Position numbers and translations under genes: made by a program | The notes under the pieces: generated by a model | Database searches by the model: none | Seen by the model: only the letters and a program-made list of their open reading frames with translations | What the model was told of the DNA's origin: nothing | In this document: positions 3,045 to 48,526 of the stretch, piece by piece | Numbering within the stretch: the stretch's first letter is position 1 | Layout of the letters: each line of letters opens with the position of its first letter | IMG/VR virus record: IMGVR_UViG_3300005056_000001 | Span: 62,001 to 126,000 of that record | Length of the DNA: 64,000 bases | Reading direction: 5' to 3' (one strand)

Positions 3045-3911
3045 TTATAGGTTAATTTTAGCTGTTGGGTGTGTTGGTTTTGTGGTTAGGTTGTTGTTGC
3101 TTAATTCTACAAGTTTCAACTTTGTCAGATATTGAATGTTTGGTGGCTTTGTTAATTGGTTGTTATTCAGGAATAACCATTCCAATTTTGCTAAACCTTT
3201 AAGTATTGGAGGATCCGTAAGTTGGTTATTATTCAGGTCTAACCAATCCAAGTTGGCCAAGTAGTTGAGGTTTGGCAGGGTCGTTAGTTGGTTATTTCCT
3301 AAGTCTATACGCTCCAAGCTGACCAACGAATCTAGGTTTGGTGGTGTATTTAGTTGATTGCGGTTCAAGTATAGCGACTTTAATTTGGTTAAATCTTTAA
3401 GATTCGGTGGTTTGGTTAATCGGTTATTATTCAAATTTACATACACCAACTTAGCCAAACCATTAAGATTTGGTGGGGTTGTTAATTGATTATTCTCTAA
3501 TTCTAAAAGGTTCAAATTTATTAATGAATCAATATTCGGTGGGGCTGTTAGTTGTGTACAACTCAAATCTAGATACTCCAAATTAACTAGACCATCAAGA
3601 TTGGGCGGTTTTGTTAGATGGATGTTATTTATATGCAAAACAGTCAAGTTAATCAAACCGTCAAATATTGGTGGGGCTGTTATCTTGGTGTTATTTATAC
3701 ACACTCGCTTTAATTTAAACACCTGCTCAACCTTGGAAAATAATTCGTCTGTGTATTTAACCTCGCCATGCATTAGTAGGAATTGATATGTATTAATTAT
3801 GTCAGGAAATACACTTAGTACATTCACATTCCCGTTACGAATTTCAATCATTGCAATATCAACATTTTCGACACCAATTGTCGAAAGTAACCGTTTTATT
3901 TTATTCTTCAT
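3045..3911 (-). CDS. LRR protein, family A (22-aa modules; 10 modules)
   Basis: N-cap IKRLLST..NIDIAM..RNGNVNVLSVFP; LxxLxLxxNQLTTPPxL repeats; C-cap THPTAKINL. Confidence 0.95.
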   Translation of the reverse strand: MKNKIKRLLSTIGVENVDIAMIEIRNGNVNVLSVFPDIINTYQFLLMHGEVKYTDELFSKVEQVFKLKRVCINNTKITAPPIFDGLINLTVLHINNIHLTKPPNLDGLVNLEYLDLSCTQLTAPPNIDSLINLNLLELENNQLTTPPNLNGLAKLVYVNLNNNRLTKPPNLKDLTKLKSLYLNRNQLNTPPNLDSLVSLERIDLGNNQLTTLPNLNYLANLDWLDLNNNQLTDPPILKGLAKLEWLFLNNNQLTKPPNIQYLTKLKLVELSNNNLTTKPTHPTAKINL

Positions 3912-3963
3912 TTCTGTCTTGTTATATAGTGATGGTATGTCACCGTGGATTAAATTGTCATGC

Positions 3964-4986
3964 TTAGATGTTAATTTTTGCTGTTGGGTGTGTTAGCTGT
4001 ATTTTTAGGTGTGTTAGGTTTGGTGTTAGGCTGTTGTTCTCTAAACCTAAAAACTCTAGATTAGCCAAACTATCAACGTTTGGCGGAGTCGTTAATTGAT
4101 TGCCGTCTAGATATAACCACTTTAAACTTACCAATCCTTCAAGTATTGGTGGCGCAGTTAATTGATTGTCGTCTAAGTGCAAATGTCTTAACATGACCAA
4201 GCCTTCAAGTATCGGTGAAATTGTTAGTCTATTGTGGTTCAGGAATAACCGATCCAACTTTATCAAACCTTCAAGTATTGGTGGGTGATTCAGCTTGTTG
4301 TCCTCTAAATCCAACCTCTCCAAATTGACTAGACCATCAAGTATCGGTGGACGGCTCAAACTGTTGGTTGTTAAATCCAAACGCTTCAACTGTATCAAAC
4401 CTCCAAGTATTGGAGGTTCTATTAGTCGATTGTAGCTCAGATCTAAAGCCTCTAACCTGTACAATCCATTAAGAACAGGCGGGAGTGTTAGTTTGTTGTG
4501 GTTAATGTACACATGCTCTAGATTGACCAACCCCCCAAGAATGGGCGGTGTCGTTAATTTGTTGTTGGTCAAGCTTAATTTCTTCAGCTTGACCAAGCCC
4601 TCGAGGCTTGGTGGTGTAGTTAATCTGTTGTTGCTTAACACCAACCTCTTTAGGTTTACCAAACCGTTAAGAATAGGCGATGTCGATGAGGTTAGTTTAT
4701 TGTTGCTCAGATATAACTGTTCCAAATTAACCAATCCATCAAGAATTACTATGTGCTTTAGGTTGTTGTTTAAGTATAAACGCTTCAGTCTGAAAACTTG
4801 CTCAATCTTACAAAATATATCATCCGTGGCTTTAACCTTGTCATTACACAGTAGGAATTTATAGGTGTCGAGTATGTTCGGAAACACACTCAACACATCC
4901 ACGTTCCCGTTGCGAAAATTAGCCATTGCAAGATCTATATTTACATCGTCGCCTGATACTAGGAGTTGTTTTATTTTATTGTTCAT
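3964..4986 (-). CDS. LRR protein, family A (12 modules)
   Basis: Start reset to the ATG at 4986 (MNNKIKQLL), just after the upstream stop; same caps; ends THPTAKINI. Confidence 0.95.
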   Translation of the reverse strand: MNNKIKQLLVSGDDVNIDLAMANFRNGNVDVLSVFPNILDTYKFLLCNDKVKATDDIFCKIEQVFRLKRLYLNNNLKHIVILDGLVNLEQLYLSNNKLTSSTSPILNGLVNLKRLVLSNNRLTTPPSLEGLVKLKKLSLTNNKLTTPPILGGLVNLEHVYINHNKLTLPPVLNGLYRLEALDLSYNRLIEPPILGGLIQLKRLDLTTNSLSRPPILDGLVNLERLDLEDNKLNHPPILEGLIKLDRLFLNHNRLTISPILEGLVMLRHLHLDDNQLTAPPILEGLVSLKWLYLDGNQLTTPPNVDSLANLEFLGLENNSLTPNLTHLKIQLTHPTAKINI

Positions 4987-4990
4987 TCTT

Positions 4991-7030: not shown

Positions 7031-7972
7031 TTAAATGACGATCTCTGCCGTGGGATGTGTTGGTGGGATGGTTAATTGGTTGTTTTTCAAGTTTAAATAC
7101 CTCAACTTAACCAACCCATCAAGATTGGGAGATGTTGCTAACAGATTGTTTTTTAAATCTATAAACTCCAAGTTGATTAGCGAATCAAGGTTTGGGGGAG
7201 AACTTAATTTGTTGTTTCTCAAAAATAACATCTCCAACTTAACCAAGTCTTCAAGATTCGGTGGGGTCGTTAGTTGGTTGACTCCCAAATTCAAACGCTC
7301 CAAGGTAACCAAACCGTTTAGTGTTGGTGTTTTGGTTAGTTGGTTATGGCTAAGGTATAAAATCTTTAAATTTACCAACCCTGAAGTGTTCGGGGTAATC
7401 GTCAATTGGTTATTGTCCAAGTTTAAATATTCCAACTTAACCAATCCTTCAAGATTTGGTGGGGCTGTCAGTTGATTAATCTTCAAGTTTAAATATTCCA
7501 AGTTTATCAAGCCTTCAAGTATTGGCGGTTTTGTCAAATCATTGTCCTCCAAATTTAAATACTCTAACCGATACAAATTAACCAAACCCTCAAGATTTGG
7601 AGCAATCGTTAATTTATTATTGGTCAAATTTAAAACCCTTAAGCTGACTAGACCTTTTAGTATTGGCGGGGTGGTTAAGTGGTTGTTATACAAAAATAAC
7701 AGCGTCAGGTTCACTAACCCTTCGAGTATTGGCGGGGTTGTTAGTTGCATATTGTCTAAAGATAGTGTTTTTATTTTAAACACCTGCTCAACCTTACAAA
7801 ACAAGTCGTCAGACACATTTACTTTGTTGTGACTTACCAAAAAATCATATGTGTCAAGTATCCTAGGAAAAATACTCAACACATCAACATTCCCGTTACG
7901 AAAATTAGCCATTGCGAGTTCTATGTTTGCATCGTCGCCTGTGGTTAGTAGTTGTTTTATTTGGTTGTGCAT
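7031..7972 (-). CDS. LRR protein, family A (11 modules)
   Basis: MHNQIKQLLTTGDDANIELAMANFRNGNVDVLSIFP cap; 22-aa repeats; ends THPTAEIVI. Confidence 0.95.
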   Translation of the reverse strand: MHNQIKQLLTTGDDANIELAMANFRNGNVDVLSIFPRILDTYDFLVSHNKVNVSDDLFCKVEQVFKIKTLSLDNMQLTTPPILEGLVNLTLLFLYNNHLTTPPILKGLVSLRVLNLTNNKLTIAPNLEGLVNLYRLEYLNLEDNDLTKPPILEGLINLEYLNLKINQLTAPPNLEGLVKLEYLNLDNNQLTITPNTSGLVNLKILYLSHNQLTKTPTLNGLVTLERLNLGVNQLTTPPNLEDLVKLEMLFLRNNKLSSPPNLDSLINLEFIDLKNNLLATSPNLDGLVKLRYLNLKNNQLTIPPTHPTAEIVI

Positions 7973-8001: not shown

Positions 8002-9000
8002 TTAAATATCAATATGTGCCGTAGGGTGTGTTGGTGTACTTGTTAGTTGGTTGTTCTCTAAATCTAAACGATCCAAATTAACTAAAGTATCAATGATTGG
8101 TGATGTCGTCAGTCGGTTGTTGTATAAGTACAAAGCTCTTAGATTGGTCAATAATTTAAGATTAGGTGGTGTAGTTAATTGGTTATCGCCCAAATCCAAC
8201 CACATCAACCCTACCAAACCTTCAATAATTGTTGTGTTGGTTAATCGGTTACAATTCAAATACAAACAAGTCAAGTTAATTACCCCCCTAAGATCAGGAG
8301 AGCTCGTCAATACGTTACTGCTCAAATCTAACCACACTAGGTTAACCAATCCTTCAAGAATTAGTGGTGTCGTCAGTCGGTTCTCGCTCAAATCCAAACG
8401 CTTCAATTTTGCTAAATTCATAAGCTTTGGTGGTGTCGTTAATCGGTTTCTGCCTAGGGTTAAACGCTCCAAATTCACTAACGTATTAAGTGTTGGTGAA
8501 TCTGTTAGTTTGTTACTGCCTAAGTTTAAACCCTTTAAATTAACCAATCCATCAACTATTGGCGGATTAGTCAGTTGGTTATTGGTCAAATATAGAACCT
8601 CTAACCTTACCAACTTATCAAGAATCGGCGAAGTGGTTAACTTGTTATTATTCAAGTATAACCGCTTTAAATTAACCAACCCTTCAAGTATTGGCGGATT
8701 CGTTAATTGGTTCTTCCCCAAGTCCAAAACCTCCAAATTAATCAATCCCTCAAGTATTGGCGGACTAGTTAGTCGGTTACTAACTAAACTTAATCGTTTC
8801 AATCTAAAAACCTGCTCAACCTTAGAAAATAAGTCATCCGTGGATTTTACCTTGGCGTGCCATAGCAAGAATTTATACGTGTCAAATATCCTAGGAAAAA
8901 TACTCAACACATCAACATTCCCATTACGAAAATTAGCCATTGCGAGTTCTATGTTTACATCGTCGCCCGTGGTTAGTAGTTGTTTTATTTGGTTGTGCAT
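8002..9000 (-). CDS. LRR protein, family A (12 modules)
   Basis: First ~125 nt nearly identical to those of the 7031-7972 gene; ends THPTAHIDI. Confidence 0.95.
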   Translation of the reverse strand: MHNQIKQLLTTGDDVNIELAMANFRNGNVDVLSIFPRIFDTYKFLLWHAKVKSTDDLFSKVEQVFRLKRLSLVSNRLTSPPILEGLINLEVLDLGKNQLTNPPILEGLVNLKRLYLNNNKLTTSPILDKLVRLEVLYLTNNQLTNPPIVDGLVNLKGLNLGSNKLTDSPTLNTLVNLERLTLGRNRLTTPPKLMNLAKLKRLDLSENRLTTPLILEGLVNLVWLDLSSNVLTSSPDLRGVINLTCLYLNCNRLTNTTIIEGLVGLMWLDLGDNQLTTPPNLKLLTNLRALYLYNNRLTTSPIIDTLVNLDRLDLENNQLTSTPTHPTAHIDI

Positions 9001-11658: not shown

Positions 11659-12498
11659 TTAAAAAATGACTGTGACATCAGGAAGCAATTTTTGAATCCT
11701 GTCCTGTTCGTCAATGGAAAGGTGACACTCATGAAGGATTAGTCTTGTTAATTTTTTCAATTCCTTGATACTGTTGGGAATTGTGTTTATGGGATTATGA
11801 CTAAGATCCAAAATTTCAAGTGATTCTAGGCCCGATATCGCCTGTGGTATTTCTTTGATGCCATTACCCGACAAATCAAGCAGCTCCAATGATTTTAGCC
11901 CACACAGGCAATTAGGAATAACATTAATATTGTTAGACCCTAGCTCAAGTGCCGCAAGATTGACAAGCTTTTCTATCCCTGAAGGAACAAGCTTTAGGTT
12001 GTTGTGAGATAAACGAATATCTGCCAAGTTTACACAGTCGTATAGCTCAACAGGAAACTCCTCGAATTTATTTCGACTTAGGTCAATCTCCTCCAACCAA
12101 CACAGCGCACTCAAGTCAGGAAGGCTTGCGAGCTTATTTCTTTGTGCCAATAATGTCCTTAGTCCTCCAAACATATTCAACCCATGAGGGAAAGAATCAA
12201 GTCCGCACCTGCTCACGTCCAAACCTTCTTGCTTTCTCAACACATCATAAGAGAGTCCTGTAATCTCGGACAGTTCCCTGTGTTTGTATGCACTTGATAC
12301 ATTTTCGGGATAGACATAATAATCAACCTCCTTTAAATTTGTTGGGTGGTGTATAACAACCTTTCCGTCATACTCGCACAGCTTCCCTATGATATGACTG
12401 CCGTCTTTTAGGTATGCCAATACATTGTCTCCAAAAATAACATTCCATGTGTTACTTTTGTTTAGTACGGGCACGTGTATTTCTATTTTTGCTTTCAT
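11659..12498 (-). CDS. LRR protein, family B (23-aa repeats) with distinct N-terminal domain
   Basis: LxxLxLxxNxxxxxP repeats after a ~95-aa domain shared with the adjacent gene. Confidence 0.9.
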   Translation of the reverse strand: MKAKIEIHVPVLNKSNTWNVIFGDNVLAYLKDGSHIIGKLCEYDGKVVIHHPTNLKEVDYYVYPENVSSAYKHRELSEITGLSYDVLRKQEGLDVSRCGLDSFPHGLNMFGGLRTLLAQRNKLASLPDLSALCWLEEIDLSRNKFEEFPVELYDCVNLADIRLSHNNLKLVPSGIEKLVNLAALELGSNNINVIPNCLCGLKSLELLDLSGNGIKEIPQAISGLESLEILDLSHNPINTIPNSIKELKKLTRLILHECHLSIDEQDRIQKLLPDVTVIF

Positions 12499-12516
12499 TG
12501 TTTTTTTGTTGGGTGG

Positions 12517-13314
12517 TTAAAAATGCACATGAACACTCGGCAACATTTTTTTTATTCGAATAAGTTCGTCGTTCGAAATATTTGTGTGTTCTAGATACAA
12601 ATTCTCTAGCTTATGCAAATTTTTGATACTGTCGGGGAGTGTTGTGAGGGGATTACCACACAAATCCAAGTATACCAAAGACTCTAGGTAGCCAATGCTC
12701 TTAGGAATCTTAACAAGCTTATTATGTCCCAAATCAAGATCCGTCAATTGTTTTAGGTTGCCTATTGACTCAGGCAAAACCTCAAGGACGTTATTGCTCA
12801 AATTTAAATCCTCTAGGTTGTTAATATCACCAATAGAGTCGGGTAATTTTTTTATCTTGTTGCGTTGGAGGTTTAGGCTTGTCAGATCCTTTAGACCCAT
12901 TTCCTCGGGCAAGGTTTCTATGTTGTTATTGGTGACACCAAGATTCCGTAGCCCCTCTAGGTCACAAACACCGTCAGGCAGGCACGTGAGATTTTTGTTA
13001 TGCAAAAACACATCATGTGGTCTTTGTTTGATGTCGGTCATTGTTCTTTGGGTGGCAGACAGTAATTCTTTAAGTTGGAATGCCTCATCAATGTTGTTTA
13101 ATTCGACATAATAAACCACCTCATCCCAATGTGTTGGCGTTCCGACCTTGTCGGTGTCGTTATTTGGAACCAACTCTCCCAATACCGTTTCGCCCTCCTT
13201 GAGGAAGCATATAACATTGGTGTCAAGCGGAAAGTTATAGTCGCCATTGCTTATTATGACAGGTTTTTTGAATTCTATTTCAAGGTTTACCCTGAATGTT
13301 TGCGGATTTTCCAT
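12517..13314 (-). CDS. LRR protein, family B, paralog of 11659-12498
   Basis: Start reset to the ATG at 13314 (MENPQ); shared N-domain (N.ICFLKEG..LG.L..PT..EV.YYV) followed by LPDSIGxL repeats. Confidence 0.9.
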   Translation of the reverse strand: MENPQTFRVNLEIEFKKPVIISNGDYNFPLDTNVICFLKEGETVLGELVPNNDTDKVGTPTHWDEVVYYVELNNIDEAFQLKELLSATQRTMTDIKQRPHDVFLHNKNLTCLPDGVCDLEGLRNLGVTNNNIETLPEEMGLKDLTSLNLQRNKIKKLPDSIGDINNLEDLNLSNNVLEVLPESIGNLKQLTDLDLGHNKLVKIPKSIGYLESLVYLDLCGNPLTTLPDSIKNLHKLENLYLEHTNISNDELIRIKKMLPSVHVHF

Positions 13315-13447
13315 ATTTTGTTTTATATTTTTTTTTTGTATGATTACAAATATAAACAAAAAATCCGTACCAAAGAATTTTGATACGGATTTTAATATAA
13401 AAATGTTTTTTGTGTGGGTTGGTAAAATTGGCAACGAAGGCTTTTAA

Positions 13448-13654
13448 TTAACCAACAACTTCGATTTCCCTGATTTTATCGTCTTTAATAGGAGCCCAAT
13501 AGCTGTCCCACATCAAGTATATATCATCACCTTCAAAGCCTATAATTTCCGCCCTGTATCGGATATGATCACTAAAACCTGCCCAAAAATCAATCACGTC
13601 ACCTTCATTGAATTTTTTGTGAGATTTCGATAGGGTTTTTGCGAATTCAATCAC
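13448..13654 (-). CDS. hypothetical protein (68 aa)
   Basis: Start overlaps the upstream stop. Confidence 0.65.
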   Translation of the reverse strand: MIEFAKTLSKSHKKFNEGDVIDFWAGFSDHIRYRAEIIGFEGDDIYLMWDSYWAPIKDDKIREIEVVG

Positions 13655-14487
13655 CTTTGACTTGGGCGACCTCCAACATAATCGCTATTACTATACCTAT
13701 CAACCAAATCTATAAATAAACCCCTCTCTAACGCTTCACCAAAATTCTTTTTAGCCATCATCTTAGGATCAATAATCTCAAGCGTATAGAAGTCGTTTGA
13801 ATGAAACCTAACACCCACATTGTTTGTTGTATCTTTGTTGTTTCCTGACCACCTAGATGTTGCACTAGGGAATCTATACAAGTCCTTGGCTAAATATAAA
13901 TTTTGACTCAACGGGTCTCTTTGTTTTAAAAAGTCGTCATCATCTGTGTATCGGTCAAATATATAGGACGCTGTTCGTTGTAGCTGAAAGTTGACCAAGC
14001 CTCTAATTACAAGCCAATTAGTCCATTTTTTCGGACGACCATTTAATGGCTTGTATGTTCCTAGAATAGAAAACACACGTTCAGTTTTAAAAAAGCTCAC
14101 GGTTGCTTTCATCATTTCTTCACCAATTTGAAGATCAATAACCTCCCCATCCGAGGCACCATCAACCAAGTCGTTGAAGGCGTTCACAAAGGACGCAATG
14201 GAGTCATACTCCCAATTCATGTTGTTGCACACCTTTAAATCGTCTCGGTTTCTATCGTCTTGGTCGTGGAAACGTATGGTGCTGCCTGTTCCTCGTGTTC
14301 CTGCATCGGTGACGTCGCTCACTACCACAGAACCTCCCCGATTTTTGTCTCTTTTTAATTCAAATCGCTGTCCGTTGTGTACCATAAATTCAAGGGTGTC
14401 TATCACACTGTCTATGTGACAAAAATTCATTTTAACCTTGTTTAAATTCTCGTCGTATGCCCCGTTGGGTATGTTTTTTAAGTTCAT
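13651..14487 (-). CDS. paralog family P member 1 (278 aa), unknown function
   Basis: MNLKNIPNGAYD..LNK start; LVIRGLVNFQLQ; FYTLEIIDPK plus a unique tail. Confidence 0.85.
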   Translation of the reverse strand: MNLKNIPNGAYDENLNKVKMNFCHIDSVIDTLEFMVHNGQRFELKRDKNRGGSVVVSDVTDAGTRGTGSTIRFHDQDDRNRDDLKVCNNMNWEYDSIASFVNAFNDLVDGASDGEVIDLQIGEEMMKATVSFFKTERVFSILGTYKPLNGRPKKWTNWLVIRGLVNFQLQRTASYIFDRYTDDDDFLKQRDPLSQNLYLAKDLYRFPSATSRWSGNNKDTTNNVGVRFHSNDFYTLEIIDPKMMAKKNFGEALERGLFIDLVDRYSNSDYVGGRPSQR

Positions 14488-14526
14488 GTTTTTGTGTTAT
14501 TTCTTTGTTTAGTGTTGCTTTTTGGT

Positions 14527-15243
14527 TTATAACTGAAGGTTGGGGTCAATAATCTCAAGTATGTAAAAATAGTTTTGATCAATACTAACCCTAATAGTGT
14601 TGTTTTGGTCATTATCACCTTCCCACCTTGATCTTGCATCAGGATAATTTGCCAAATCATTGGCCAAATATACATTCTTGGACAATGTGTCTCTACTTTT
14701 TAAATTGTCACCATACACATTAAGTGTGTCGGATTCTACTTGTTGTAACTGAAAGTTTGCCAAGCCTCTAACCACAAGCCAATTGCTCCATTTGCGTGGA
14801 CGTTTTTTCAATGGCGGGTAAGTTCCTAGAATGGAAAATGTACGACCCGTACCAAAATATGTTAGAGTAACATTCATGGACACGCCACCAACCTCAACAA
14901 ATTTAATTGCACCATCTGTTGCGGTGCTTGCCGACGCATTGAAGTAGTTTACAAAAGATGTAATAGAATCAAATTCTAGATTCATCCCGTCGCACACCTT
15001 CAAAGAGTCCTTGCTATTGATGTCATGAAACTTCAATCTAACTCCTGTGCCTCTTACTCCTGCATTGGTAACCTCGGAGCATATTATTGAGCCACGAGAC
15101 GGCTCTTTTTTCAATTCGAAGCGTTGGTTATCGTGGATTATATATTTTAATTTGTTTGTCGAGCTGTCAACACGACAAAAATCAAAATTTGTTTTGTTCA
15201 GATCAACGTCATATGCCCCGTTGGGTATGTTTTTTAAATTCAT
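14527..15243 (-). CDS. paralog family P member 2 (238 aa)
   Basis: Same motifs; ends ILEIIDPNLQL. Confidence 0.85.
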   Translation of the reverse strand: MNLKNIPNGAYDVDLNKTNFDFCRVDSSTNKLKYIIHDNQRFELKKEPSRGSIICSEVTNAGVRGTGVRLKFHDINSKDSLKVCDGMNLEFDSITSFVNYFNASASTATDGAIKFVEVGGVSMNVTLTYFGTGRTFSILGTYPPLKKRPRKWSNWLVVRGLANFQLQQVESDTLNVYGDNLKSRDTLSKNVYLANDLANYPDARSRWEGDNDQNNTIRVSIDQNYFYILEIIDPNLQL

Positions 15244-15264
15244 ATTTTGTTATGATTTGGTTGG

Positions 15265-15996
15265 TTATACCCGAATTTTAGGATCAATGATTTTAAGAAA
15301 ATAAGATTCGTCAGGATAAAACACCACATTAACAAAATTACTGTCGATATTCCCATCCTTCCAACTAGCATACGCATTTGTGTCGATATTTATGTCACTA
15401 GCAAAATCCGTGGTATTTTTCATATTTAATGGTGTCTTTGAGTTGTCCTGTCCGTTATCGAAATTATACAAACGAGATACTTCTTGTAGTTGAAAATTCA
15501 TAAGTCCACGAATCACCAATGCTCGTGTCCATTCTTTTGGTCTATTTCTTATTGGTTCATATAGACCCATAAGGGAAAAATATGAACTAGAATCCTTGAC
15601 GCTTACATTTGTCTTGAATTCGTTTTCGTTTAAAGTGACGGTGTCGCTATTAAATTCCCCTCTTGCACCCTTCGAAAGCTTTTCTAGGAGTTTTACCATA
15701 CCCGATATAAGCATATTACCATCACGATATATTCTGTATATACTATTCATTAATTTCGTACTATCATTCCAAATACCATGAATAGTTAATTCGATAATCT
15801 GCCCTCTTTCCATTCCCGATTCTGTAACGTCCTTTAGTGAGATGCTGCCCAAATTCATATTGGTAAATTCAATCTCGTACCGTCTACCTTTGTGTACAAT
15901 ATATTGCATACCATGATACCTAATATCACCGAGGTCTAGTGTTGTTTTATTTAAATCTTTGTCATAAGAACCGTCAGACACATTCGTTAATTTCAT
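15265..15996 (-). CDS. paralog family P member 3 (243 aa)
   Basis: Same motifs; ends LKIIDPKIRV. Confidence 0.85.
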   Translation of the reverse strand: MKLTNVSDGSYDKDLNKTTLDLGDIRYHGMQYIVHKGRRYEIEFTNMNLGSISLKDVTESGMERGQIIELTIHGIWNDSTKLMNSIYRIYRDGNMLISGMVKLLEKLSKGARGEFNSDTVTLNENEFKTNVSVKDSSSYFSLMGLYEPIRNRPKEWTRALVIRGLMNFQLQEVSRLYNFDNGQDNSKTPLNMKNTTDFASDINIDTNAYASWKDGNIDSNFVNVVFYPDESYFLKIIDPKIRV

Positions 15997-16039
15997 TTTT
16001 TTTAGTTGTAGTTGTTAATATTGTATGGACACAATATAA

Positions 16040-16090
16040 TTAATCACAGTCAACCCGAATTTTAGGATCAACAATTTCGAGAGTGTAATA
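16040..16090 (-). pseudogene. orphan 3' tip of a family P gene
   Basis: Translates YYTLEIVDPKIRVDCD-stop with no start codon; shares ACCCGAATTTTAGGATCAA with sites near 15269 and 16349. Confidence 0.75.
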
Positions 16091-16095
16091 CTAGT

Positions 16096-17076: not shown

Positions 17077-17119
17077 TTTCGTTGCTTTTAAGGTTTGAGT
17101 TAATAGTGTATGTACCAAC

Positions 17120-32653: not shown

Positions 32654-32718
32654 AAAACAAAACAAAACAAAACAAAACAAAACAAAACAAAACAAAACAA
32701 AACAAAACAAAACAAAAC
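32654..32718 (+). repeat. (AAAAC)13 microsatellite
   Basis: 13 perfect units, ending 10 nt before the ATG at 32729. Confidence 0.97.
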
Positions 32719-32728
32719 AACACAAGCA

Positions 32729-33010
32729 ATGAAAGCAAAATTCGAAGAAGACGACAGAGTGGTATACGACGGTTTGGTTGCTATTGTTGACCGAGTGAAT
32801 ACACATGGTGGCCGTATTAGTTACGACCTAACATCCGATGTGGATCCTGAATTGACATGTACAGCAAACGAGGTCGATTGCGAGAAGTACGACTGTGATA
32901 ACGACTTGGAACAAGAAAACACCCTAAAGCGTATCGGAATCAACAACAGACTAATGACACAAAGAATTGCCTCCACAACATACAAGCACCTAAGAGACGG
33001 TACCCATTGA
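32729..33010 (+). CDS. hypothetical protein (93 aa)
   Basis: KFEEDDRVVY..AIV, KOW/SH3-like start. Confidence 0.7.
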   Translation: MKAKFEEDDRVVYDGLVAIVDRVNTHGGRISYDLTSDVDPELTCTANEVDCEKYDCDNDLEQENTLKRIGINNRLMTQRIASTTYKHLRDGTH

Positions 33011-33029
33011 TCATATCACAACACAACAA

Positions 33030-33365
33030 ATGAAACCCAATCCGAACATATTTGAGTTATGCAAGAAGGCATTCGCCGAAAACGAGTTTGTACTATATCA
33101 AATGGGCACGGAGGTCAAGCTGACTCGGTACTATGGGTTCATACTTCTTCGATACAACAAGAAAACCAAGAACACACATGTCATAAGGGTTGCCAATATC
33201 AGAAACCTGATTAATCTTTGTCACAAAAAAGGTTTCACCACCCACAACCCCTGCGGAATCTCCAAAAAACATTACACTTTTCAGAAAGGGGCAATTCTTA
33301 ACGAATACTACAAGGGTGATCGAAGAACCGATTTGGTTGATTTAAAATATACCAAGAAACAATAA
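33030..33365 (+). CDS. hypothetical protein (111 aa)
   Basis: ORF in run. Confidence 0.7.
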   Translation: MKPNPNIFELCKKAFAENEFVLYQMGTEVKLTRYYGFILLRYNKKTKNTHVIRVANIRNLINLCHKKGFTTHNPCGISKKHYTFQKGAILNEYYKGDRRTDLVDLKYTKKQ

Positions 33366-37452: not shown

Positions 37453-37511
37453 TTTTATGGGTTGGACTAAAAACCGTGCTTGGTGTTATTAAATAATCAA
37501 AAAATAATATA

Positions 37512-38198
37512 ATGAAAACAACGAACAAAATAAATACTACCATTCTAAAATTACTTACATCAGGAAGTCGCAAAGACATAGATCATGCAATGTCAGTGTT
37601 TCGTGATGAAGATGTGGATGTGTTATGCATGTTCCCAAAAATAGTTGACACGTTCGAATTTCTGCTAGGTCATGGCAAGGTAAACCCCACGGACGATTTG
37701 CTTTTTAAGGCCGAGCAGGTCTTTAGGGTGGAGGGTTTATATTTAGTGAATAAACAATTGACGAGTCCCCCAATACTTGATGGTTTGGTGAATCTAGATT
37801 CGCTATTTTTATCGAATAATCAATTGACGATTCCTCCAATACTTGACGGGTTAGTAAACCTAACATATTTAGGGTTAGAGAACAATCAATTGACGATTCC
37901 CCCAATACTTCATGGGTTAAATAACTTGATATATTTATATCTAGAGAACAACCAACTAACCACACCACCGATTTTTGACGGTTTAGTGAACCTAAAATCT
38001 TTATGGTTGAATAATAACCAACTAGCTAACACTCCATCACTCGAAGGGTTGGTAAAGTTGGAGTTTTTGCATTTAAGCGACAATAAACTAAAAACACCGC
38101 CAAATCTTGATGGCTTGGTCAAGTTACAGGAGATATACTTAAGCCGCAATCCACTAGGTAACCCACCAACCCACAAAAGCGCAGTAATTCATATTTAA
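37512..38198 (+). CDS. LRR protein, family A (7 modules)
   Basis: Cap LKLLTSGSRKDIDHAM..DVLCMFP; ends THKSAVIHI. Confidence 0.95.
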   Translation: MKTTNKINTTILKLLTSGSRKDIDHAMSVFRDEDVDVLCMFPKIVDTFEFLLGHGKVNPTDDLLFKAEQVFRVEGLYLVNKQLTSPPILDGLVNLDSLFLSNNQLTIPPILDGLVNLTYLGLENNQLTIPPILHGLNNLIYLYLENNQLTTPPIFDGLVNLKSLWLNNNQLANTPSLEGLVKLEFLHLSDNKLKTPPNLDGLVKLQEIYLSRNPLGNPPTHKSAVIHI

Positions 38199-38201: not shown

Positions 38202-38284
38202 AAGTGTTAAAATTTTGTTAAAATATCCATTATTCTTTGATGGTGTCTAAATAAACACGTACTTGGTGTTATTAAATAATCAAA
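38202..38284 (+). repeat. 83-bp direct repeat, copy 1 (promoter module)
   Basis: Near-identical to 40319-40401; its 3' part (CTTGGTGTTATTAAATAATCAAA) also precedes the gene at 37512. Confidence 0.95.
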
Positions 38285-38295: not shown

Positions 38296-39050
38296 ATGAA
38301 AACTCGGAAAGAAATCGGCGAATCCATCATTATTGAATTACTTACACTAGGAAATCGTGATGATATAACCCGTGCAATGGATATATTTCGTAATGGAAAA
38401 GTGAATATATTAAGTATGTTCCCGAAAATACTCGACACCTTTGAGCTTCTGCTAAGCCATAACAAGGTAAACCCCACAGACGATTTGTTTTCAAAGACCG
38501 AGCAGGTATTTAGGTTGGAGTATTTATACTTGAACTACATTCAACTAACGACCCACCAATACTTGATGGTTTGGTAAACCTACAGGATCTTTATCTGAAC
38601 AACAACCAACTAACCACACCTCCAATACTTGATGGATTGGTAAACATAAGGTTGTTAGACCTAGAGTACAACCAATTAACCACACCACCGAATCTTAAAT
38701 CTTTGATAAACTTGGAGTTTTTAGAACTGAACGACAACCAACTAACGACACTACCGAATCTTGAAGGTTTATTAAAGTTAAAGAGGTTAGACTTGGACTA
38801 CAACCAATTAACGAACCCGCCACTGCTTAATGGTTTGGTAAATCTAAGACAGCTATTGTTGGGCGACAACCAATTGACTACACCGCCAATACTCGAAGGT
38901 TTGGTAAGGTTAGAGCATTTGGATTTAGATAATAACCAATTAATCACACCGCCGAATCTTGACGGATTACTCGATTTACAGGATGTGTATTTGAGCGGTA
39001 ACCAATTTACCACTCCACCAAGCCACCCACACGCCGAAATACGCATTTAA
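38296..39050 (+). pseudogene. LRR gene, family A, split by a 1-bp deletion (8 modules when rejoined)
   Basis: ACG ACC CAC CAA at 38548-38559 versus the consensus ACC CCA CCA: one C is missing from a C-run at 38552-38554. This joins ORFs 38296-38577 and 38571-39050. Confidence 0.85.
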
Positions 39051-39073: not shown

Positions 39074-39649
39074 ATGAAAAATCAAAAACATATACTAGAA
39101 ATATATAATTTTTTACTCAATTATGGAGAAGTCAAGCCAACAGACGACCTGTCCGCCAAGGTCGAAGAGCTCGAAAAAATAACAATTTTGGACTTGAGAT
39201 ATAGAAAATTGACTAGTATACCAAGCCTAGAGGCATTGGTGAATTTAGAACTCTTGGATTTGGACAATAACGACCTGACCGATCCTCCAATACTCAAGGG
39301 CTTGGTAAATCTAAAGCAGTTGTATTTGGGCCATAACCAACTTGAAACCCCTCCAAATCTTGAAGGATTGGTAAAATTAAATGTTTTAGCCTTAAACGAC
39401 AACCAACTAACAACCCCACCAAACCTAGAAGGGTTATCAATACTGAACGTTTTATATTTAGACAACAATAAACTGATGACGACACCCAATCTTGATGGGC
39501 TGTCAAACCTAGAGCGTGTACATTTAAACGGTAATCACCTAAGCACACCACCGAACCTAGAAGGCTTAAACAGATTAACATGGGCACGTTTTGAGAACAA
39601 CCCACTAACAACCCCACCAACACACCCAACAGCGACAATTGATATTTAA
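39074..39649 (+). CDS. LRR protein, family A, short-cap type (7 modules)
   Basis: Begins at the ILE.Y.FLL..G.VK.TDDL part of the cap; ends THPTATIDI. Confidence 0.95.
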   Translation: MKNQKHILEIYNFLLNYGEVKPTDDLSAKVEELEKITILDLRYRKLTSIPSLEALVNLELLDLDNNDLTDPPILKGLVNLKQLYLGHNQLETPPNLEGLVKLNVLALNDNQLTTPPNLEGLSILNVLYLDNNKLMTTPNLDGLSNLERVHLNGNHLSTPPNLEGLNRLTWARFENNPLTTPPTHPTATIDI

Positions 39650-39672: not shown

Positions 39673-40320
39673 ATGGTTACAAAAAAAAGCATACTAGAAA
39701 CATACGATTTTCTTCTTAAACACGACAAGGTCAAAGCAACAGTCGATGTGTCTGCCAAGATTAAGGAAGTCAAAAAAATCGTTGTGTTAGAGTTGGGTTC
39801 TGAAGAGTTGACCAACATACCGAGCCTTGCAGGCTTGGTTAATTTGTTGATTTTAGATTTGGGCTGTAACGAACTCACCACACTTCCGAGTCTAGAAGGA
39901 TTGGTAAAATTGGAGATTTTAGATTTAGCCAACAACAAAATAACTACACCGCCAATACTAGAAGGATTGGTAAGATTAAGCACCTTATTCTTGGACAACA
40001 ACGATCTAAACACACCGCCAAATCTTGAAGGCTTAATTAGATTGGAGACCTTGCACCTGAGCTCTAATAAACTAAAAACACCACCAAATCTTGAAGGCTT
40101 AATTAGATTGGAGACCTTGCACCTGAGCTCTAATAAACTAAAAACACCACCCAATCTTAAGGGTGTGCCGATTCTAGTAATGTTGGTATTAAACGACAAC
40201 AAATTAACAACTCCGCCAAACCTTGAAGGATTGTCCAATTTGAGAGATGTATACTTATACAACAACCCACTAACAAGCATACCAACCCACCCAACCGCAT
40301 CAATTAATATTGAAGATTAA
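39673..40320 (+). CDS. LRR protein, family A, short-cap type (8 modules)
   Basis: Contains a perfect 66-bp duplication; ends THPTASINIED. Confidence 0.95.
   Translation: MVTKKSILETYDFLLKHDKVKATVDVSAKIKEVKKIVVLELGSEELTNIPSLAGLVNLLILDLGCNELTTLPSLEGLVKLEILDLANNKITTPPILEGLVRLSTLFLDNNDLNTPPNLEGLIRLETLHLSSNKLKTPPNLEGLIRLETLHLSSNKLKTPPNLKGVPILVMLVLNDNKLTTPPNLEGLSNLRDVYLYNNPLTSIPTHPTASINIED
40018..40149 (+). repeat. perfect 2 x 66-bp tandem duplication of one LRR module
   Basis: 40018-40083 is identical to 40084-40149. Confidence 0.97.
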
Positions 40321-40401
40321 GTGTTAATATTTTGTTAAAATTGTCATTATTCTTTGATGGTGTCTAAATAAACACGTACTTGGTGTTATTAAATAATCAA
40401 A
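40319..40401 (+). repeat. 83-bp direct repeat, copy 2 (promoter module)
   Basis: Near-identical to 38202-38284. Confidence 0.95.
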
Positions 40402-45821: not shown

Positions 45822-46367
45822 ATGGAAAAACTAAAAATGTCCGACATATCAAAACCGCTAGATTTTAATGTCGGCTCTGTCCAATGTTTGGCACACCATG
45901 GCTCAAAACTCCTCTCGGGTCGTTACGATTTCGATTTTAATGTTTATTTACCCACAAGGGAAATGAATCTACAGCGTGAATTGGTTTGGACAGATCACCA
46001 AAAAAGTGAATTTATTAAGTCTATAATAAAAGGCATAAAGATACCACCGTTTTGTCTGATAGAAAATACCCACGAGGATGGGACTTCGTACTATGAGGTA
46101 ATCGACGGCAAACAACGCCTGAGTACCTACATTTCATTCATTAAAGGAGAATTTAATATAATGAACAATGGTATTGAATACTCAATAGATGGCTTGGACA
46201 GTAAAACATGCAATCGTGTGGAACAATGGGGAATACATGCACACATCGCATTTAGCGACCCCGAAAACAGAATCACAGACGATCAAAAAATCGCATGGTT
46301 TAGGCTAATTAATTACACCTCGACTCCACAGGAGGACATTCATCTACAGAACCTCGAAAAACAGTAG
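45822..46367 (+). CDS. stand-alone DUF262 domain protein
   Basis: LQRELVWTDHQKSEFIKSIIKG..IPPF..VIDGKQRLST. Confidence 0.88.
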   Translation: MEKLKMSDISKPLDFNVGSVQCLAHHGSKLLSGRYDFDFNVYLPTREMNLQRELVWTDHQKSEFIKSIIKGIKIPPFCLIENTHEDGTSYYEVIDGKQRLSTYISFIKGEFNIMNNGIEYSIDGLDSKTCNRVEQWGIHAHIAFSDPENRITDDQKIAWFRLINYTSTPQEDIHLQNLEKQ

Positions 46368-46624: not shown

Positions 46625-46727
46625 TTGTTGGAACAATTGAGAATATATGCATATTGTTTTGTTGATGTGAGATTTTATGATTACATTGTGTGACTGTTAA
46701 TAACGAAATCAAGAAGTATTGAATAAT

Positions 46728-47462
46728 ATGAACGATAAAATTAAGCAATTGCTTGCATCAGGCGACGATGCAAATATAGAACTTGCAATGGCTAATTTTC
46801 GTAACGGGAATGTGGATGTACTGAGTGTTTTCCCGAATATACTGAAGACGTTCGAACTTTTGCTTTTTCACTGTATGGTTGACCATACAGATGACTTGCT
46901 TTTTAAGGTTGAGCAGGTGTTTAACATTAAGCAGTTATACTTGGATAACTTCCAACTAATTAGTCCGCCAATACTAGAAGGTTTGGTTAGGTTGGAGCGT
47001 TTGGATTTACGAAACAACCAACTGACCCAAACACCAAATCTTGAAGGATTGTTTAGGTTGGAGTGTTTGGATTTACAAAATAACCAACTGACAACCCCAC
47101 CAAATATAAAAGGATTGGTAAATTTAGAGTATTTATACCTGTGTGACAACCGACTGAAAAAGCCGCAAAACATTAAAGGATTGGTAAATTTGGAGTGGTT
47201 GTATTTGGGTAATAACCAATTGACTACTCCACCAATACTTGATGGTTTAGTAAAGCTGAAGGTATTAGATTTGAATCATAACAATTTAATCACTCCACCA
47301 ATGCTAGATGGTTTAGTAAAGCTGAAGGCATTATTTTTGGAGAATAACCAACTAACAAAACCGCTAAGTATAAAGGGATTGGTAGAACTGAAATTTTTAC
47401 ATTTACAGAACAACCCACTCAAAACAAAACCATCCCACCCAACAGCCGAAATATACATTTAA
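46728..47462 (+). CDS. LRR protein, family A (8 modules)
   Basis: MNDKIKQLLASGDDANIELAMANFRNGNVDVLSVFP; ends SHPTAEIYI. Confidence 0.95.
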   Translation: MNDKIKQLLASGDDANIELAMANFRNGNVDVLSVFPNILKTFELLLFHCMVDHTDDLLFKVEQVFNIKQLYLDNFQLISPPILEGLVRLERLDLRNNQLTQTPNLEGLFRLECLDLQNNQLTTPPNIKGLVNLEYLYLCDNRLKKPQNIKGLVNLEWLYLGNNQLTTPPILDGLVKLKVLDLNHNNLITPPMLDGLVKLKALFLENNQLTKPLSIKGLVELKFLHLQNNPLKTKPSHPTAEIYI

Positions 47463-47483
47463 AATACCAAAAAATACAATAAC

Positions 47484-48526
47484 ATGAAACCTCAAAAAAC
47501 AATCAACATACTAAATACCTACGAATTCCTACTAAAGCACGGCAAGGTCAAAGCAACAGACGATTTGTCTGTTAAGATAAAAGTACTCGAAATGGTCGTG
47601 TCGTTAGATTTAGCCTCTAAGCAGCTAACACTCATACCGTGTCTTGAGGGTTTGGTGAACTTGGTACGTTTAGACCTTAGCTACAACCAACTGACCACTC
47701 CGCCAATACTCAAAGGTTTGTGTGGCTTGAAGGTTTTACTTTTGCATAATAATCAATTGACTACGGCACCAAATCTTGAAGGTGTTGTAAGGTTAGAGTG
47801 GTTACACTTGAGTGATAATCAACTGACCTCACCACCAAACCTTGAAGGCTTGGTGAAGTTGGAGCTGTTATACTTAGACGACAATCAATTAACTGCGCCA
47901 CCAATACTTGAAGGATTGGTAAATTTAAAGTGGTTATATCTAGACGGCAATCAATTAACTACTCCGCCAATGCTTAATGGTTTGGTAAATTTGGAGCGAT
48001 TACATCTAGACGGCAATCAATTAACAACTCCGCCAATACTTAATGGATTGGTAAATTTGGAGCTGTTATACTTAGACGGCAATCAATTAACTGCGCCACC
48101 AATGGTTTGGTAAATTTGGAGCGATTACATCTAGACGGCAATCAATTAACAACTCCGCCAATACTTAATGTTTTGGTAAATTTAGAGCGATTGAAATTAA
48201 ACAGTAACAGCCTAGACAAAACACCAAATCTAGAAGGTTTAGTAAACTTGGCTTTTTTGGATCTCGGTCACAACAAATTGACGTTACAGCCAATACTAGA
48301 AGGTTTGGTTTACTTGAGAGGTTTAAGTTTGTGTCACAACCAACTAACAACCCCACCAATCCTTAAAGGTTTGGTTAATTTGGAGCGTTTATACCTGAGT
48401 CACAACAGACTAGACAGATCACCAACGCTCGATGGATTGTTGAAATTGAAGTGGTTAGACCTAGGCAACAACCCACTTAAGACAAAAACAAAACCATCCC
48501 ACCCAACAGCAGAAATTAACATTTAA
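47484..48526 (+). pseudogene. LRR gene, family A, short-cap type, split by a 7-bp deletion (14 modules when rejoined)
   Basis: CCAATGGT at 48099-48106 versus the consensus CCAATACTTAATGGT; joins ORFs 47484-48113 and 48107-48526. Confidence 0.88.

What the first reader, a model, noticed from the sequence alone, without database searches (positions are those of the whole stretch)
3045..48526. Phage-borne, VLR/antibody-like repertoire of variable LRR proteins (family A, 10 loci, about 97 modules)
Seen: ten genes (3045, 3964, 7031, 8002 on minus; 37512, 38296, 39074, 39673, 46728, 47484 on plus) share one design. Each has a constant helical N-cap, then 7-14 modules of 22 aa/66 bp, then a constant C-cap of the HP(T/H)AxIxI type. 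The scaffold NQLTTPPxLEGLVxL is nearly fixed, while the x positions of LxxLxLxx differ in almost every module and are rich in Y/W/F/R/D/E/H (e.g. LEYLNLEDN, LVWLDLSSN, LTCLYLNCN, LKSLWLNNN). There are no signal peptides. Established: those x positions form the concave ligand-binding face of LRR solenoids, and capped variable LRR arrays are how jawless-fish VLRs work. Inference: the phage keeps an evolvable library of intracellular protein binders, for example inhibitors or decoys of host anti-phage proteins. I know of no described phage system like this, but I could not search.
Basis: partly seen in the sequence, partly recalled or inferred. Interest (0 to 1): 0.92.

Follow-up and report, generated by a model that had tools for sequence, protein, structure and literature searches.

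The report
LRR binder gene family, jumbo phage
A 368-kb phage of Bacteroidota from sub-seafloor crustal fluid carries ten genes (of at least nineteen leucine-rich-repeat genes on the contig) for small proteins without signal peptides; they are an old, fixed family of paralogs that probably bind proteins, not an antibody- or VLR-like diversifying system.

Summary
Ten loci at the stated coordinates encode a helical N-cap, 7-14 repeats of 22 residues (97 modules in all) and a short C-cap ending THPTAxIxI. None has a signal peptide or a membrane segment.

The contig is a jumbo phage. It is IMG/VR UViG 3300005056_000001 (368 kb), from North Pond crustal fluid, and it shares four large genes with Bacteroidota jumbo phages such as PTm1 and PAU.

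The VLR/antibody reading is not supported:
- All ten are complete genes, each with its own caps. No cassette arrays, reverse transcriptase or deaminase turned up.
- Synonymous sites between modules are saturated, so the modules are old.
- The contrast between variable x positions and a fixed scaffold is the same in 60 unrelated LRR proteins.
- In the few recent module pairs pN/pS is below 1.
- Three assemblies agree exactly over the stretches compared (A5-A8; the two long ones also A9-A10), apart from N-gaps.

The family changes by ordinary birth-and-death: tandem module duplication, gene-conversion tracts and pseudogenes.

The N-terminal domain has no detectable relative elsewhere, but a second LRR family on the same contig shares it.

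Most likely these are germline-encoded cytoplasmic binders of host proteins, comparable to the repeat-protein families of large eukaryotic viruses. That function is inferred, not shown.

The parts
3045..3911 (-). A1: long N-cap, 10 LRR modules, C-cap
3964..4986 (-). A2: long N-cap, 12 modules, C-cap. The start is the ATG at 4986, as in the IMG gene call of 340 aa; the ORF lister extends it to a TTG at 5019.
7031..7972 (-). A3: long N-cap, 11 modules (one of 25 residues), C-cap
8002..9000 (-). A4: long N-cap, 12 modules, C-cap. Modelled as a capped solenoid with 13 strands.
37512..38198 (+). A5: long N-cap, 7 modules, C-cap
38296..39050 (+). A6: long N-cap plus 8 modules, broken by a 1-nt frameshift near 38553 into ORFs 38296-38577 and 38571-39050. 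Probable pseudogene or truncated product. The same sequence appears in three assemblies.
39074..39649 (+). A7: short N-cap, 7 modules, C-cap
39673..40320 (+). A8: short N-cap, 8 modules, C-cap. Modules 5 and 6 are a 94%-identical tandem duplicate, and the ENA reassembly has a 100-N gap there (about 40139).
46728..47462 (+). A9: long N-cap, 8 modules, C-cap
47484..48526 (+). A10: short N-cap plus 14 modules, split at 48100 by a module 7 nt short into ORFs 47484-48113 and 48107-48526. It contains recent module duplicates, and the ENA reassembly has a 100-N gap at 48155/48156.
11659..13434 (-). Two family-B LRR genes (11659-12498 and 12517-13434) with longer repeats of the LPxxIGxL type and a different N-terminal region
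52410..56437 (+). Five tandem family-B LRR genes (52410-53075, 53112-53804, 53902-54615, 54619-55320, 55313-56437). Their N-terminal domain is homologous to the family-A N-cap.
37479..37501 (+). Conserved 23-nt element directly upstream of A5. Identical copies lie at 38262-38284 (upstream of A6) and 40379-40401. Candidate shared promoter or leader.
38202..38224 (+). Conserved 23-nt element after A5. Copies lie at 40319-40341 (after A8) and at 2346-2368(-) and 1396-1418(-) (after the A2-A1-ATPase unit). Candidate operon boundary signal.

Best explanation
Family A is a multigene family, specific to this lineage, of small LRR solenoid proteins encoded by a 368-kb jumbo phage of a Bacteroidota host (probably Saprospiraceae-like). 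Each gene is a complete, germline-fixed unit made of a helical N-terminal domain, 7-14 repeats of the 22-residue SDS22/internalin class, and a one-strand C-cap.

The genes sit in short co-directional units (A2-A1, A4-A3, A5, A6-A7-A8, A9-A10) on both arms of a divergently transcribed region. That region is full of genes without known relatives, not of recognisable structural genes.

The family grew by old gene and module duplication, since synonymous sites are saturated. It still turns over by ordinary homologous processes: tandem module duplication (A8, A10), short gene-conversion tracts (the 5' ends of A3 and A4; A2 modules 10-11 against A10 modules 5-6), and loss by frameshift (A6, A10).

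No two arrays are colinear, and isoelectric points range from 4.3 to 9.2. So the ten proteins present ten different concave faces.

Inferred, not shown: they stay in the infected cell's cytoplasm. Each binds a different host (or phage) protein through its concave face, to redirect or block it. They would then be a fixed panel of binders for host takeover or counter-defence, working like the ankyrin, LRR and kelch families of poxviruses and giant viruses.

The N-terminal domain is shared with a second LRR family, so it may be a common handle rather than only a cap.
For: LRR identity and fold:
- Pfam LRR_4/LRR_8 match all ten.
- The AlphaFold2 model has pLDDT 94.9 and pTM 0.90, with five N-terminal helices and 13 strands.
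- Best structural matches are SDS22, Leptospira LIC10831 and the internalins.
- The sequence aligns without gaps to internalin A across the repeats.

No export signal.

Phage origin:
- The window lies on IMG/VR contig 3300005056_000001, with an offset of 62000.
- The 1388-aa metallophosphoesterase matches phrog_35725 over its full length, with homologues in PAU, PTm1 and MA9V.
- The 988-aa methylase-helicase matches phrog_24008 at E 1e-279.
- A 1070-aa protein matches phrog_29329 at E 2e-230, with homologues in PTm1, pT24, PAU, MA9V, the Lak phages and LR756500.1.
- PTm1 ORF-047 has a homologue in the window.

Bacteroidota host:
- Only 6 of 74 genes have a Shine-Dalgarno-like motif, and the leaders are A-rich.
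- The ligase is 55-60% identical to those of Saprospiraceae and Aureispira.

Age and turnover:
- pS between modules is 0.67-0.81.
- Mean module identity is 57% at the DNA level, and only 10 of 4656 pairs reach 80%.
- No colinear diagonals exist between any two genes.
- The N-caps of A3 and A4 have dS 0.28, and the first ~105 coding nt are 97% identical.
- Frameshifts in A6 and A10.

Shared N-domain: hhalign gives probability 92% and E 6e-7 over 69 columns between the N-termini of family A and family B.
Against: No experiment or expression data bears on function.
- No binding partner is known.
- Family A and B proteins match no PADLOC model, so no link to defence systems was seen. PADLOC holds defence, not anti-defence, proteins.
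- Location in the virion cannot be excluded.
- Two of the ten genes are broken, which could mean the family is partly dispensable.
- No relative genome exists for comparison, so selection on the concave faces could not be measured.
Confidence: 0.6

Rival explanations
1. A VLR/antibody-like or otherwise actively diversifying repertoire. Modules would be reshuffled or hypermutated (cassette copy-choice, a DGR, or programmed recombination) to produce new binders quickly.
For: - The capped variable LRR design looks superficially like VLRs.
- A few recent module duplications and conversion tracts exist.
- Assemblers break at the duplicated modules of A8 and A10, which could hide copy-number heterogeneity.
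Against: - All genes are complete, with their own caps and start and stop codons. There is no incomplete acceptor gene and no array of uncapped cassettes.
- Synonymous sites between modules are saturated, so most modules are old and are not being exchanged.
- No reverse transcriptase or deaminase appears in the Pfam results for the window and its flanks.
- No template/variable repeat pair exists.
- The caps hold 0-3 cysteines, unlike the disulphide-rich LRRNT/LRRCT caps.
- Three assemblies are 100% identical over A5-A8.
- The entropy profile is generic for LRRs.
- pN/pS is below 1 in recent pairs.
Confidence: 0.03
2. Virion-associated proteins. They would be either host-recognition parts or proteins packed in the head and ejected with the DNA, with the shared N-terminal domain acting as the packaging or assembly signal.
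For: - A constant N-terminal domain on many otherwise different proteins, in two LRR families, is the pattern expected of a targeting signal.
- In the jumbo phage Goslar, LRR or beta-helix domains occur on virion proteins proposed to act in host recognition.
- Another member with this N-domain lies beside a conserved 1070-aa jumbo-phage core gene.
Against: - The genes lie among replication genes and genes without relatives (ligase, methylase, helicase, nucleoid-associated protein), not in a recognisable structural block.
- The proteins are small (190-350 aa) and have no tail-fibre or baseplate domain.
- Three members lack the N-terminal extension.
Confidence: 0.15
3. Proteins aimed at a eukaryote (a grazer, host or prey of the bacterium) and exported by a host secretion system that needs no signal peptide.
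For: - The closest viral structural matches are giant-virus LRR proteins.
- The only bacterial genome with the same repeat motif is a Dependentiae MAG. My own knowledge, not a tool result: Dependentiae are known as associates of protists.
Against: - There is no signal peptide, no T9SS C-terminal domain and no recognisable secretion-system marker.
- The similarity to giant-virus proteins is generic LRR similarity at 19-35% identity.
Confidence: 0.07
4. The region is bacterial chromosome or plasmid carrying ordinary LRR paralogues, wrongly binned as viral.
For: - Tandem LRR gene arrays exist in Bacteroidota chromosomes, for example 15-23 consecutive genes in Flavobacterium psychrophilum.
- The ligase and the nucleoid-associated protein are of bacterial type.
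Against: - Four large genes are full-length members of families found only in Bacteroidota jumbo and mega phages.
- Most ORFs have no relatives.
- No tRNA genes were found and no housekeeping gene was recognised in the window.
- Two assemblies give the same 368-kb length from different start points, as expected of a complete phage genome.
Confidence: 0.02

Closest known systems
SDS22-like / internalin-class LRR proteins (22-residue repeats with an N-terminal helical cap)
   Same: - The 22-residue period.
- A gapless sequence alignment to internalin A over the repeats.
- Best fold matches are SDS22, LIC10831 and the internalins.
- A helical cap precedes the first repeat.
   Different: - No signal peptide, no Ig-like inter-repeat domain and no cell-wall anchor.
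- The N-terminal domain has no sequence or fold relative.
- The C-cap is a single strand with the THPTAxIxI motif.
- The genes are encoded by a phage.
Variable lymphocyte receptors of jawless fish
   Same: Capped LRR arrays whose concave-face residues differ from module to module.
   Different: - VLRs are assembled somatically from uncapped cassettes into one incomplete gene, with cytidine deaminases, and carry cysteine-rich caps.
- Here there are ten complete germline genes with old modules, no cassettes and no deaminase, and the sequence is identical across assemblies.
Repeat-protein multigene families of large eukaryotic viruses (the entomopoxvirus 'LRR gene family', giant-virus LRR proteins, poxvirus ankyrin/F-box host-range genes)
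   Same: - Many paralogues of a binder fold in a large viral genome, clustered in variable, non-core regions.
- The best viral fold matches are these proteins.
- The entomopoxvirus annotation is cited.
   Different: - The host is a bacterium, so no ubiquitin ligase is there to be hijacked.
- There is no F-box or PRANC domain; an orphan N-terminal helical domain takes that position.
- Function is unknown in both the LRR cases.
LRR paralogues in other phages: huge phage LR756500.1 (462 kb), Leptospira LE1-like phages, PHROG families 6688, 21719 and 7816
   Same: - LR756500.1 belongs to the same assemblage of Bacteroidota huge phages.
- It has 25 places matching family B, including LRR proteins of about 250 aa with no evident signal peptide.
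- The PHROG families match family A and B repeats.
   Different: - Those use 23-residue repeats of the LPxEIGxL type and other termini.
- Family A's repeat motif (NQLTTPPxLxGL) and its N-cap occur in no other IMG/VR contig.
- None of these phage families has a known function or a published description that I could find.
Tandem LRR gene arrays of Bacteroidota chromosomes (Flavobacterium psychrophilum)
   Same: Consecutive LRR genes whose number varies between strains, in the same host phylum.
   Different: By my own knowledge, not a tool result, those are chromosomal surface proteins discussed in relation to virulence. The genes here are phage genes without export signals.

Membership tests
Leucine-rich repeat superfamily | Tandem repeats carrying the LxxLxLxxN(x)L motif | tested here: met
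   Pfam LRR_4, LRR_8 and LRR_1 match all ten, above the curated cut-offs. 97 modules are in register.
Leucine-rich repeat superfamily | Curved solenoid with one beta-strand per repeat on the concave face | tested here: met
   AlphaFold2 model with pLDDT 94.9 and one strand every 22 residues. Foldseek matches to solved LRR structures at E about 1e-13.
SDS22-like / internalin-class LRR | 22-residue repeat length | tested here: met
   Spacing is 22 in 83 of 85 steps between consecutive repeat anchors within an ORF. Gapless alignment to internalin A. SDS22 is the top fold match.
Internalin family proper | Signal peptide, Ig-like inter-repeat domain, surface anchoring | tested here: not met
   No N-terminal hydrophobic region. 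The proteins end about 10 residues after the last repeat.
VLR-type assembled receptor system | One incomplete germline gene flanked by many uncapped donor cassettes | tested here: not met
   All ten loci have a start codon, an N-cap, a C-cap and a stop codon. No uncapped module arrays appear in the window.
VLR-type assembled receptor system | Cysteine-rich LRRNT and LRRCT caps | tested here: not met
   0-3 cysteines per protein. The N-cap is helical and the C-cap is a single strand.
VLR-type assembled receptor system | AID/APOBEC-like deaminase and sequence variation between cells or genomes | tested here: not met
   No deaminase domain among the Pfam results for the window and its flanks. Assemblies are identical over A5-A8. 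Variation at read level could not be tested.
Diversity-generating retroelement target | Reverse transcriptase plus a template/variable repeat pair differing at adenines | tested here: not met
   No reverse transcriptase domain was found (same calls). Only a few module pairs are near-identical, and their differences are not adenine-specific. The rest of the contig was not scanned.
Bacteroidota jumbo/mega phage assemblage (PTm1, pT24, PAU, MA9V, Lak, LR7565xx) | Shared large core genes | tested here: met
   Full-length matches to phrog_35725, phrog_24008 and phrog_29329, with tblastn homologues in those phages. Capsid and terminase genes were not located.
Phage anti-defence proteins | Demonstrated binding or inhibition of a host defence component | not testable with these tools
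   No homology to any characterised inhibitor was seen. There is no PADLOC match. An experiment is needed.

The most novel reading that the evidence does not exclude
The phage carries a germline panel of at least nineteen LRR binders in two repeat classes. At least thirteen of them share an orphan N-terminal helical domain. Each binder would recognise a different host protein, for example a defence sensor or effector. The common N-domain would couple them to one shared partner, such as a packaging route into the capsid or a degradation or sequestration machine. That would make the panel an innate, hard-wired counter-immunity repertoire in a bacterial virus.
Probability: 0.2. Interest if true: 0.8.

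Novelty: new variant of a known kind. Interest (0 to 1): 0.45.

Why it matters
Large viruses of eukaryotes are known to expand families of repeat-protein binders that deal with their hosts. In phages such families have hardly been described and none has a known function.

Here is a clean case: a complete 368-kb phage genome in which about 13% of a 64-kb stretch is one LRR family. It sits beside a second family that shares the same orphan N-terminal domain.

If these proteins bind host defence or housekeeping proteins, they would offer:
- a set of natural, compact, cysteine-poor cytoplasmic binders;
- a route to finding the host targets that matter to jumbo phages of Bacteroidota.

It does not provide a new mechanism for generating diversity.

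Tried and rejected
- Relatives of the N-cap. I tried a word-based search of 5.8 billion proteins, a full HMMER profile search of 1.84 billion representatives, IMG/VR, JGI metagenome contigs, PDB by sequence and PDB by fold with the isolated domain. The profile search returned only the window's own A6 fragment, plus chance matches to ankyrin and low-complexity repeats. IMG/VR returned only the own contig. The others returned nothing.
- The family-A repeat motif as a DNA pattern. It hits only the own contig in IMG/VR. In 596 Gb of bacterial genomes it gives three single hits, of which one (of the two examined) is a real LRR protein, in a Dependentiae MAG.
- Close relatives of the phage, sought through the 1388-aa protein: only the contig itself. 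Megablast of 25 kb against isolated phages: nothing.
- An alignment of three-module blocks was too variable to seed a locus search.
- dN/dS across all modules is not computable, because synonymous sites are saturated.
- I checked whether the contig belongs to the asfarvirus-like giant-virus MAG from the same metagenome. That MAG has 19 contigs, N50 38 kb and GC 29%, so it cannot contain a 368-kb contig of 38% GC.
- Walking along the contig in search of capsid or terminase genes found only genes without relatives, replication genes and more LRR genes.
- Similarity of the short N-cap to the N-terminus of the LR756500.1 LRR proteins is inconclusive (E 0.04 and no hit).
- Ribosomal frameshifting at the A6 and A10 breaks: I saw no slippery heptamer on reading the sequence and did not pursue it.

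Full report
**1. The observation**

The ORF list and direct translation show the ten loci at the stated coordinates. Each protein has three parts: a helical N-terminal region, a run of 22-residue leucine-rich repeats, and a short tail ending in THPTAxIxI or a close variant.

Anchoring on the LxxLxLxxNxL core gives a spacing of exactly 22 residues, with two exceptions: a 24-residue module in A2 and a 25-residue module in A3. Slicing in register yields 97 modules, distributed 10, 12, 11, 12, 7, 8, 7, 8, 8 and 14.

Pfam LRR_4, LRR_8 and LRR_1 match all the proteins far above their cut-offs. Three PHROG families of unknown function also match.

Over 75 internal modules the core positions carry 0.1-0.4 bit of entropy. 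The five x positions of LxxLxLxx carry 2.6-3.7 bits and are rich in aromatic and charged residues.

There is no N-terminal hydrophobic region and no membrane-spanning segment.

- A6 is broken by a single-base frameshift in a short C run near 38553.
- A10 is broken by a module that is 7 nt short at 48100, next to a 97%-identical copy of the preceding module.

**2. Where the sequence comes from**

The window is positions 62001-126000 of IMG/VR contig UViG_3300005056_000001, which is 368,109 bp long. The metagenome is Ga0071102: cold oxic crustal fluid from IODP Hole U1383C (shallow horizon) at North Pond on the Mid-Atlantic Ridge flank, sampled in 2012 (PMC4776111).

The same genome is present in two other assemblies:
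- An ENA reassembly gives a 368,684-bp scaffold that starts at a different point. That fits a complete genome that is circular or circularly permuted.
- A JGI reassembly gives a 9.5-kb contig.

Several large genes tie the contig to the jumbo and mega phages of Bacteroidota:
- A 1388-aa metallophosphoesterase covers the whole of phrog_35725, with homologues in PAU, PTm1/PTm5, MA9V and pT24.
- A 988-aa methylase-helicase covers phrog_24008 at E 1e-279.
- A 463-aa protein is homologous to PTm1 ORF-047.
- A 1070-aa protein at about contig position 307 kb covers phrog_29329 at E 2e-230. It has homologues in PTm1, pT24, PAU gp264, MA9V, MaF61, the Lak phages and several huge phages from metagenomes.

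The host is probably a member of the Bacteroidota:
- Only 6 of 74 genes have a Shine-Dalgarno-like motif, and the leaders are A-rich and G-poor. That this is typical of Bacteroidota is established knowledge.
- The NAD-dependent ligase is 55-60% identical to those of Saprospiraceae and Aureispira.

The asfarvirus-like giant-virus MAG from the same metagenome cannot include this contig. I did not locate capsid or terminase genes.

**3. Fold**

An AlphaFold2 model of A4, built on the eight intact paralogues, has mean pLDDT 94.9 and pTM 0.90. It shows five N-terminal helices and then one short strand every 22 residues, thirteen in all.

The best solved matches are human SDS22, Leptospira LIC10831/LIC12759 and the Listeria internalins. 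By sequence, the repeats align to internalin A in one gapless stretch. The repeats therefore belong to the SDS22/internalin class.

The best matches among predicted viral structures are LRR proteins of giant viruses and entomopoxviruses. No phage protein appears in the top 50.

**4. Is the variability special?**

It is not.

I extracted repeats from 60 unrelated LRR proteins returned by the homology search and computed the same three entropies for each protein:

| Positions | 60 unrelated LRR proteins | Family A, per gene |
|---|---|---|
| Concave | 1.6-2.9 bits | 1.7-2.3 bits |
| Core | 0-1.1 bits | 0-0.4 bits |
| Remaining | 0.3-2.6 bits | 0.8-1.5 bits |

A fixed scaffold with variable x positions is simply what an LRR is.

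At the DNA level the modules are old:
- The mean pairwise identity of 4656 module pairs is 57%, and only ten pairs reach 80%.
- The proportion of synonymous differences is 0.67-0.81 in every partition. That is saturation, so dN/dS cannot be estimated for the family.
- The scaffold is therefore kept by purifying selection on the protein, not by recent copying.
- No pair of genes shows a colinear run of related modules.

In the seven recent module pairs, pN/pS is 0.66 at concave positions and 0.39 elsewhere. These figures rest on 14 and 32 changes, so they suggest relaxed constraint and give no evidence for positive selection.

**5. How the family changes**

The recent events are of the ordinary kind:
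- Tandem duplication of a module in A8 (94% identity), and of several modules in A10.
- A two-module tract shared at 85-89% identity between A2 and A10, which lie 43 kb apart on opposite strands.
- A tract of about 105 nt at the 5' ends of the neighbours A3 and A4 that is 97% identical, after which identity falls to background. The N-cap dS is 0.28, against saturation in the repeats.
- Two frameshifted members.

Together this is birth-and-death evolution with occasional unequal crossing-over and gene conversion.

The ENA scaffold carries 100-N gaps exactly inside the duplicated modules of A8 and A10. Those two spots are ambiguous for assemblers, and copy number there could vary within the population. 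Outside those gaps the assemblies are identical, including the A6 frameshift. Because at least two of the assemblies use the same reads, this is not evidence from independent samples.

**6. What is missing for a diversifying system**

- Every locus is a complete gene with its own caps.
- There is no acceptor gene, no array of uncapped cassettes, and no template/variable repeat pair.
- No reverse transcriptase or deaminase appears among my Pfam scans or the precomputed Pfam hits for the window and about 10 kb on each side.
- The caps are not the cysteine-rich caps of VLRs.

**7. The N-terminal domain**

Seven genes have the full domain of about 66 residues. Three keep only its last two helices, which form the minimal cap.

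No relative was found anywhere:
- A word-based search of 5.8 billion proteins found nothing.
- An exhaustive profile search of 1.84 billion representatives found only the window's own A6 fragment and chance hits to ankyrin-like and low-complexity repeats.
- IMG/VR returned only the own contig.
- JGI metagenome contigs returned nothing.
- PDB by sequence gave no meaningful match.
- PDB by fold with the isolated domain gave no match with E below 3.

A profile-profile comparison does show that the domain is homologous to the N-terminal domain of the five tandem family-B LRR genes at 52410-56437 (probability 92%, E 6e-7 over 69 columns). A further protein with this N-domain lies at about contig position 307 kb.

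Family B uses a different, longer repeat type. One N-terminal domain thus heads two classes of LRR array. This is the most unusual feature of the locus. It suggests the domain does more than cap the solenoid.

**8. Context**

Family A occupies 8.3 kb, or 13% of the window. With family B, the window holds 17 LRR genes. One more lies just upstream of the window and one at about 307 kb, so the contig has at least nineteen.

The genes sit in short co-directional units on both arms of a strand switch at about 31.7-33.0 kb. Their neighbours are genes without relatives plus a ligase, a methylase, a nucleoid-associated protein and ParB/GmrSD_N-like proteins.

Two conserved 23-nt intergenic elements flank several of the units.

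Neither LRR family matches a PADLOC defence model.

**9. Comparison with what is known**

- LRR multigene families are a recognised feature of entomopoxviruses and giant viruses.
- In phage sequence databases they exist but I found no study that examines them. LR756500.1 is a 462-kb phage of the same broad assemblage. It has 25 places matching family B, including LRR proteins of about 250 aa with no evident signal peptide.
- Leptospira LE1-like phages have up to 14 such places.
- PTm1, PAU, MA9V, pT24 and the Lak phages gave no LRR match, so the expansion is specific to certain lineages.
- Tandem LRR arrays also occur in Bacteroidota chromosomes.
- Literature searches found no functional study of a phage LRR family. 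They found only passing annotations and a proposed host-recognition role for LRR-bearing virion proteins of phage Goslar.

**10. Verdict**

The feature is real, phage-borne and unusual in scale. It is a conventional germline paralogue family, not a VLR-like system.

The most likely role is a fixed panel of cytoplasmic protein binders acting on host proteins during infection. This is inferred from the fold, the lack of export signals, the differing concave faces, the position of the genes in the genome, and analogy with large eukaryotic viruses. A counter-defence role is possible but untested, and delivery through the virion is the main rival.

I rate it a new variant of a known kind, with moderate interest.

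Noticed in passing
window 11659-13434 (-) and 52410-56437 (+); L018:16637-17554; L020:4980-5873: A second LRR family (family B) with longer repeats of the LPxxIGxL type. Seven genes lie in the window and at least two more elsewhere on the contig. The five tandem plus-strand genes and the one at about contig position 307 kb share the family-A N-terminal domain.
   Followed up: partly
window 38545-38577 and 48095-48113: Frameshifts split A6 (three C where the frame needs four) and A10 (a module 7 nt short). Both are reproduced in the reassemblies, but these come at least partly from the same reads.
   Followed up: partly
window 7868-7972 and 8896-9000 (-): The first ~105 coding nt of the neighbours A3 and A4 are 97% identical, while the rest of the two genes is at background identity. 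This is a short gene-conversion tract.
   Followed up: yes
window 2411-3022 (-): A 203-aa ORF 22 nt downstream of A1 on the same strand. It matches only the two ends (Walker A and the C-terminal motifs) of AAA_15 / AriA / PtuA / GajA-type defence ATPases, like a miniature or truncated copy.
   Followed up: partly
window 21764-22585 (+) and 45822-46367 (+): Two paralogous ORFs with a GmrSD_N (DUF262, ParB-like) domain, also matching the PADLOC model NsnA. The second lies just upstream of A9.
   Followed up: no
window 13651-17118 (-): Four tandem paralogues (278, 238, 243 and 340 aa). The two scanned had no Pfam or PHROG match. This is another family expanded in this lineage, next to family B.
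   Followed up: no
window 1396-1418, 2346-2368 (-); 38202-38224, 40319-40341 (+); 37479-37501, 38262-38284, 40379-40401 (+): Two conserved 23-nt intergenic elements, with 4 and 3 copies against fewer than 0.01 expected by chance. All are oriented with local transcription. They may be phage promoter or boundary signals.
   Followed up: partly
window 34225-36384 (+): A full-length NAD-dependent DNA ligase whose nearest cellular relatives (55-60% identity) are from Saprospiraceae and Aureispira. This is a hint to the host lineage.
   Followed up: partly
window 24700-28866 (-): A 1388-aa metallophosphoesterase with an SbcC-like region, conserved over its full length in Bacteroidota jumbo phages (phrog_35725).
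   Followed up: partly
window 31698-33030; 30216-30308: A strand switch between a minus-strand block (1-31698) and a plus-strand block (33030-64000). Nearby is a 46-nt imperfect palindrome with adjacent arms, just downstream of the 463-aa gene. An A-rich simple repeat at about 32619 is a gap in the ENA scaffold.
   Followed up: no
L008:2991-4631 (-), Dependentiae MAG JAHDWT010000013.1: A 546-aa LRR protein with an N-terminal hydrophobic segment that looks like a signal peptide. Its 22-residue repeats carry the same NQLTTPPxLxGL-type motif as family A. It was the only hit found to be an LRR protein (two of the three hits were examined) in 596 Gb of bacterial genomes.
   Followed up: partly
L011 (LR756500.1 178908-219447): This 462-kb huge phage (this stretch 24% GC) carries dispersed LRR genes of about 250 aa with conserved N- and C-terminal regions. 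It is an independent LRR expansion in a related phage.
   Followed up: partly
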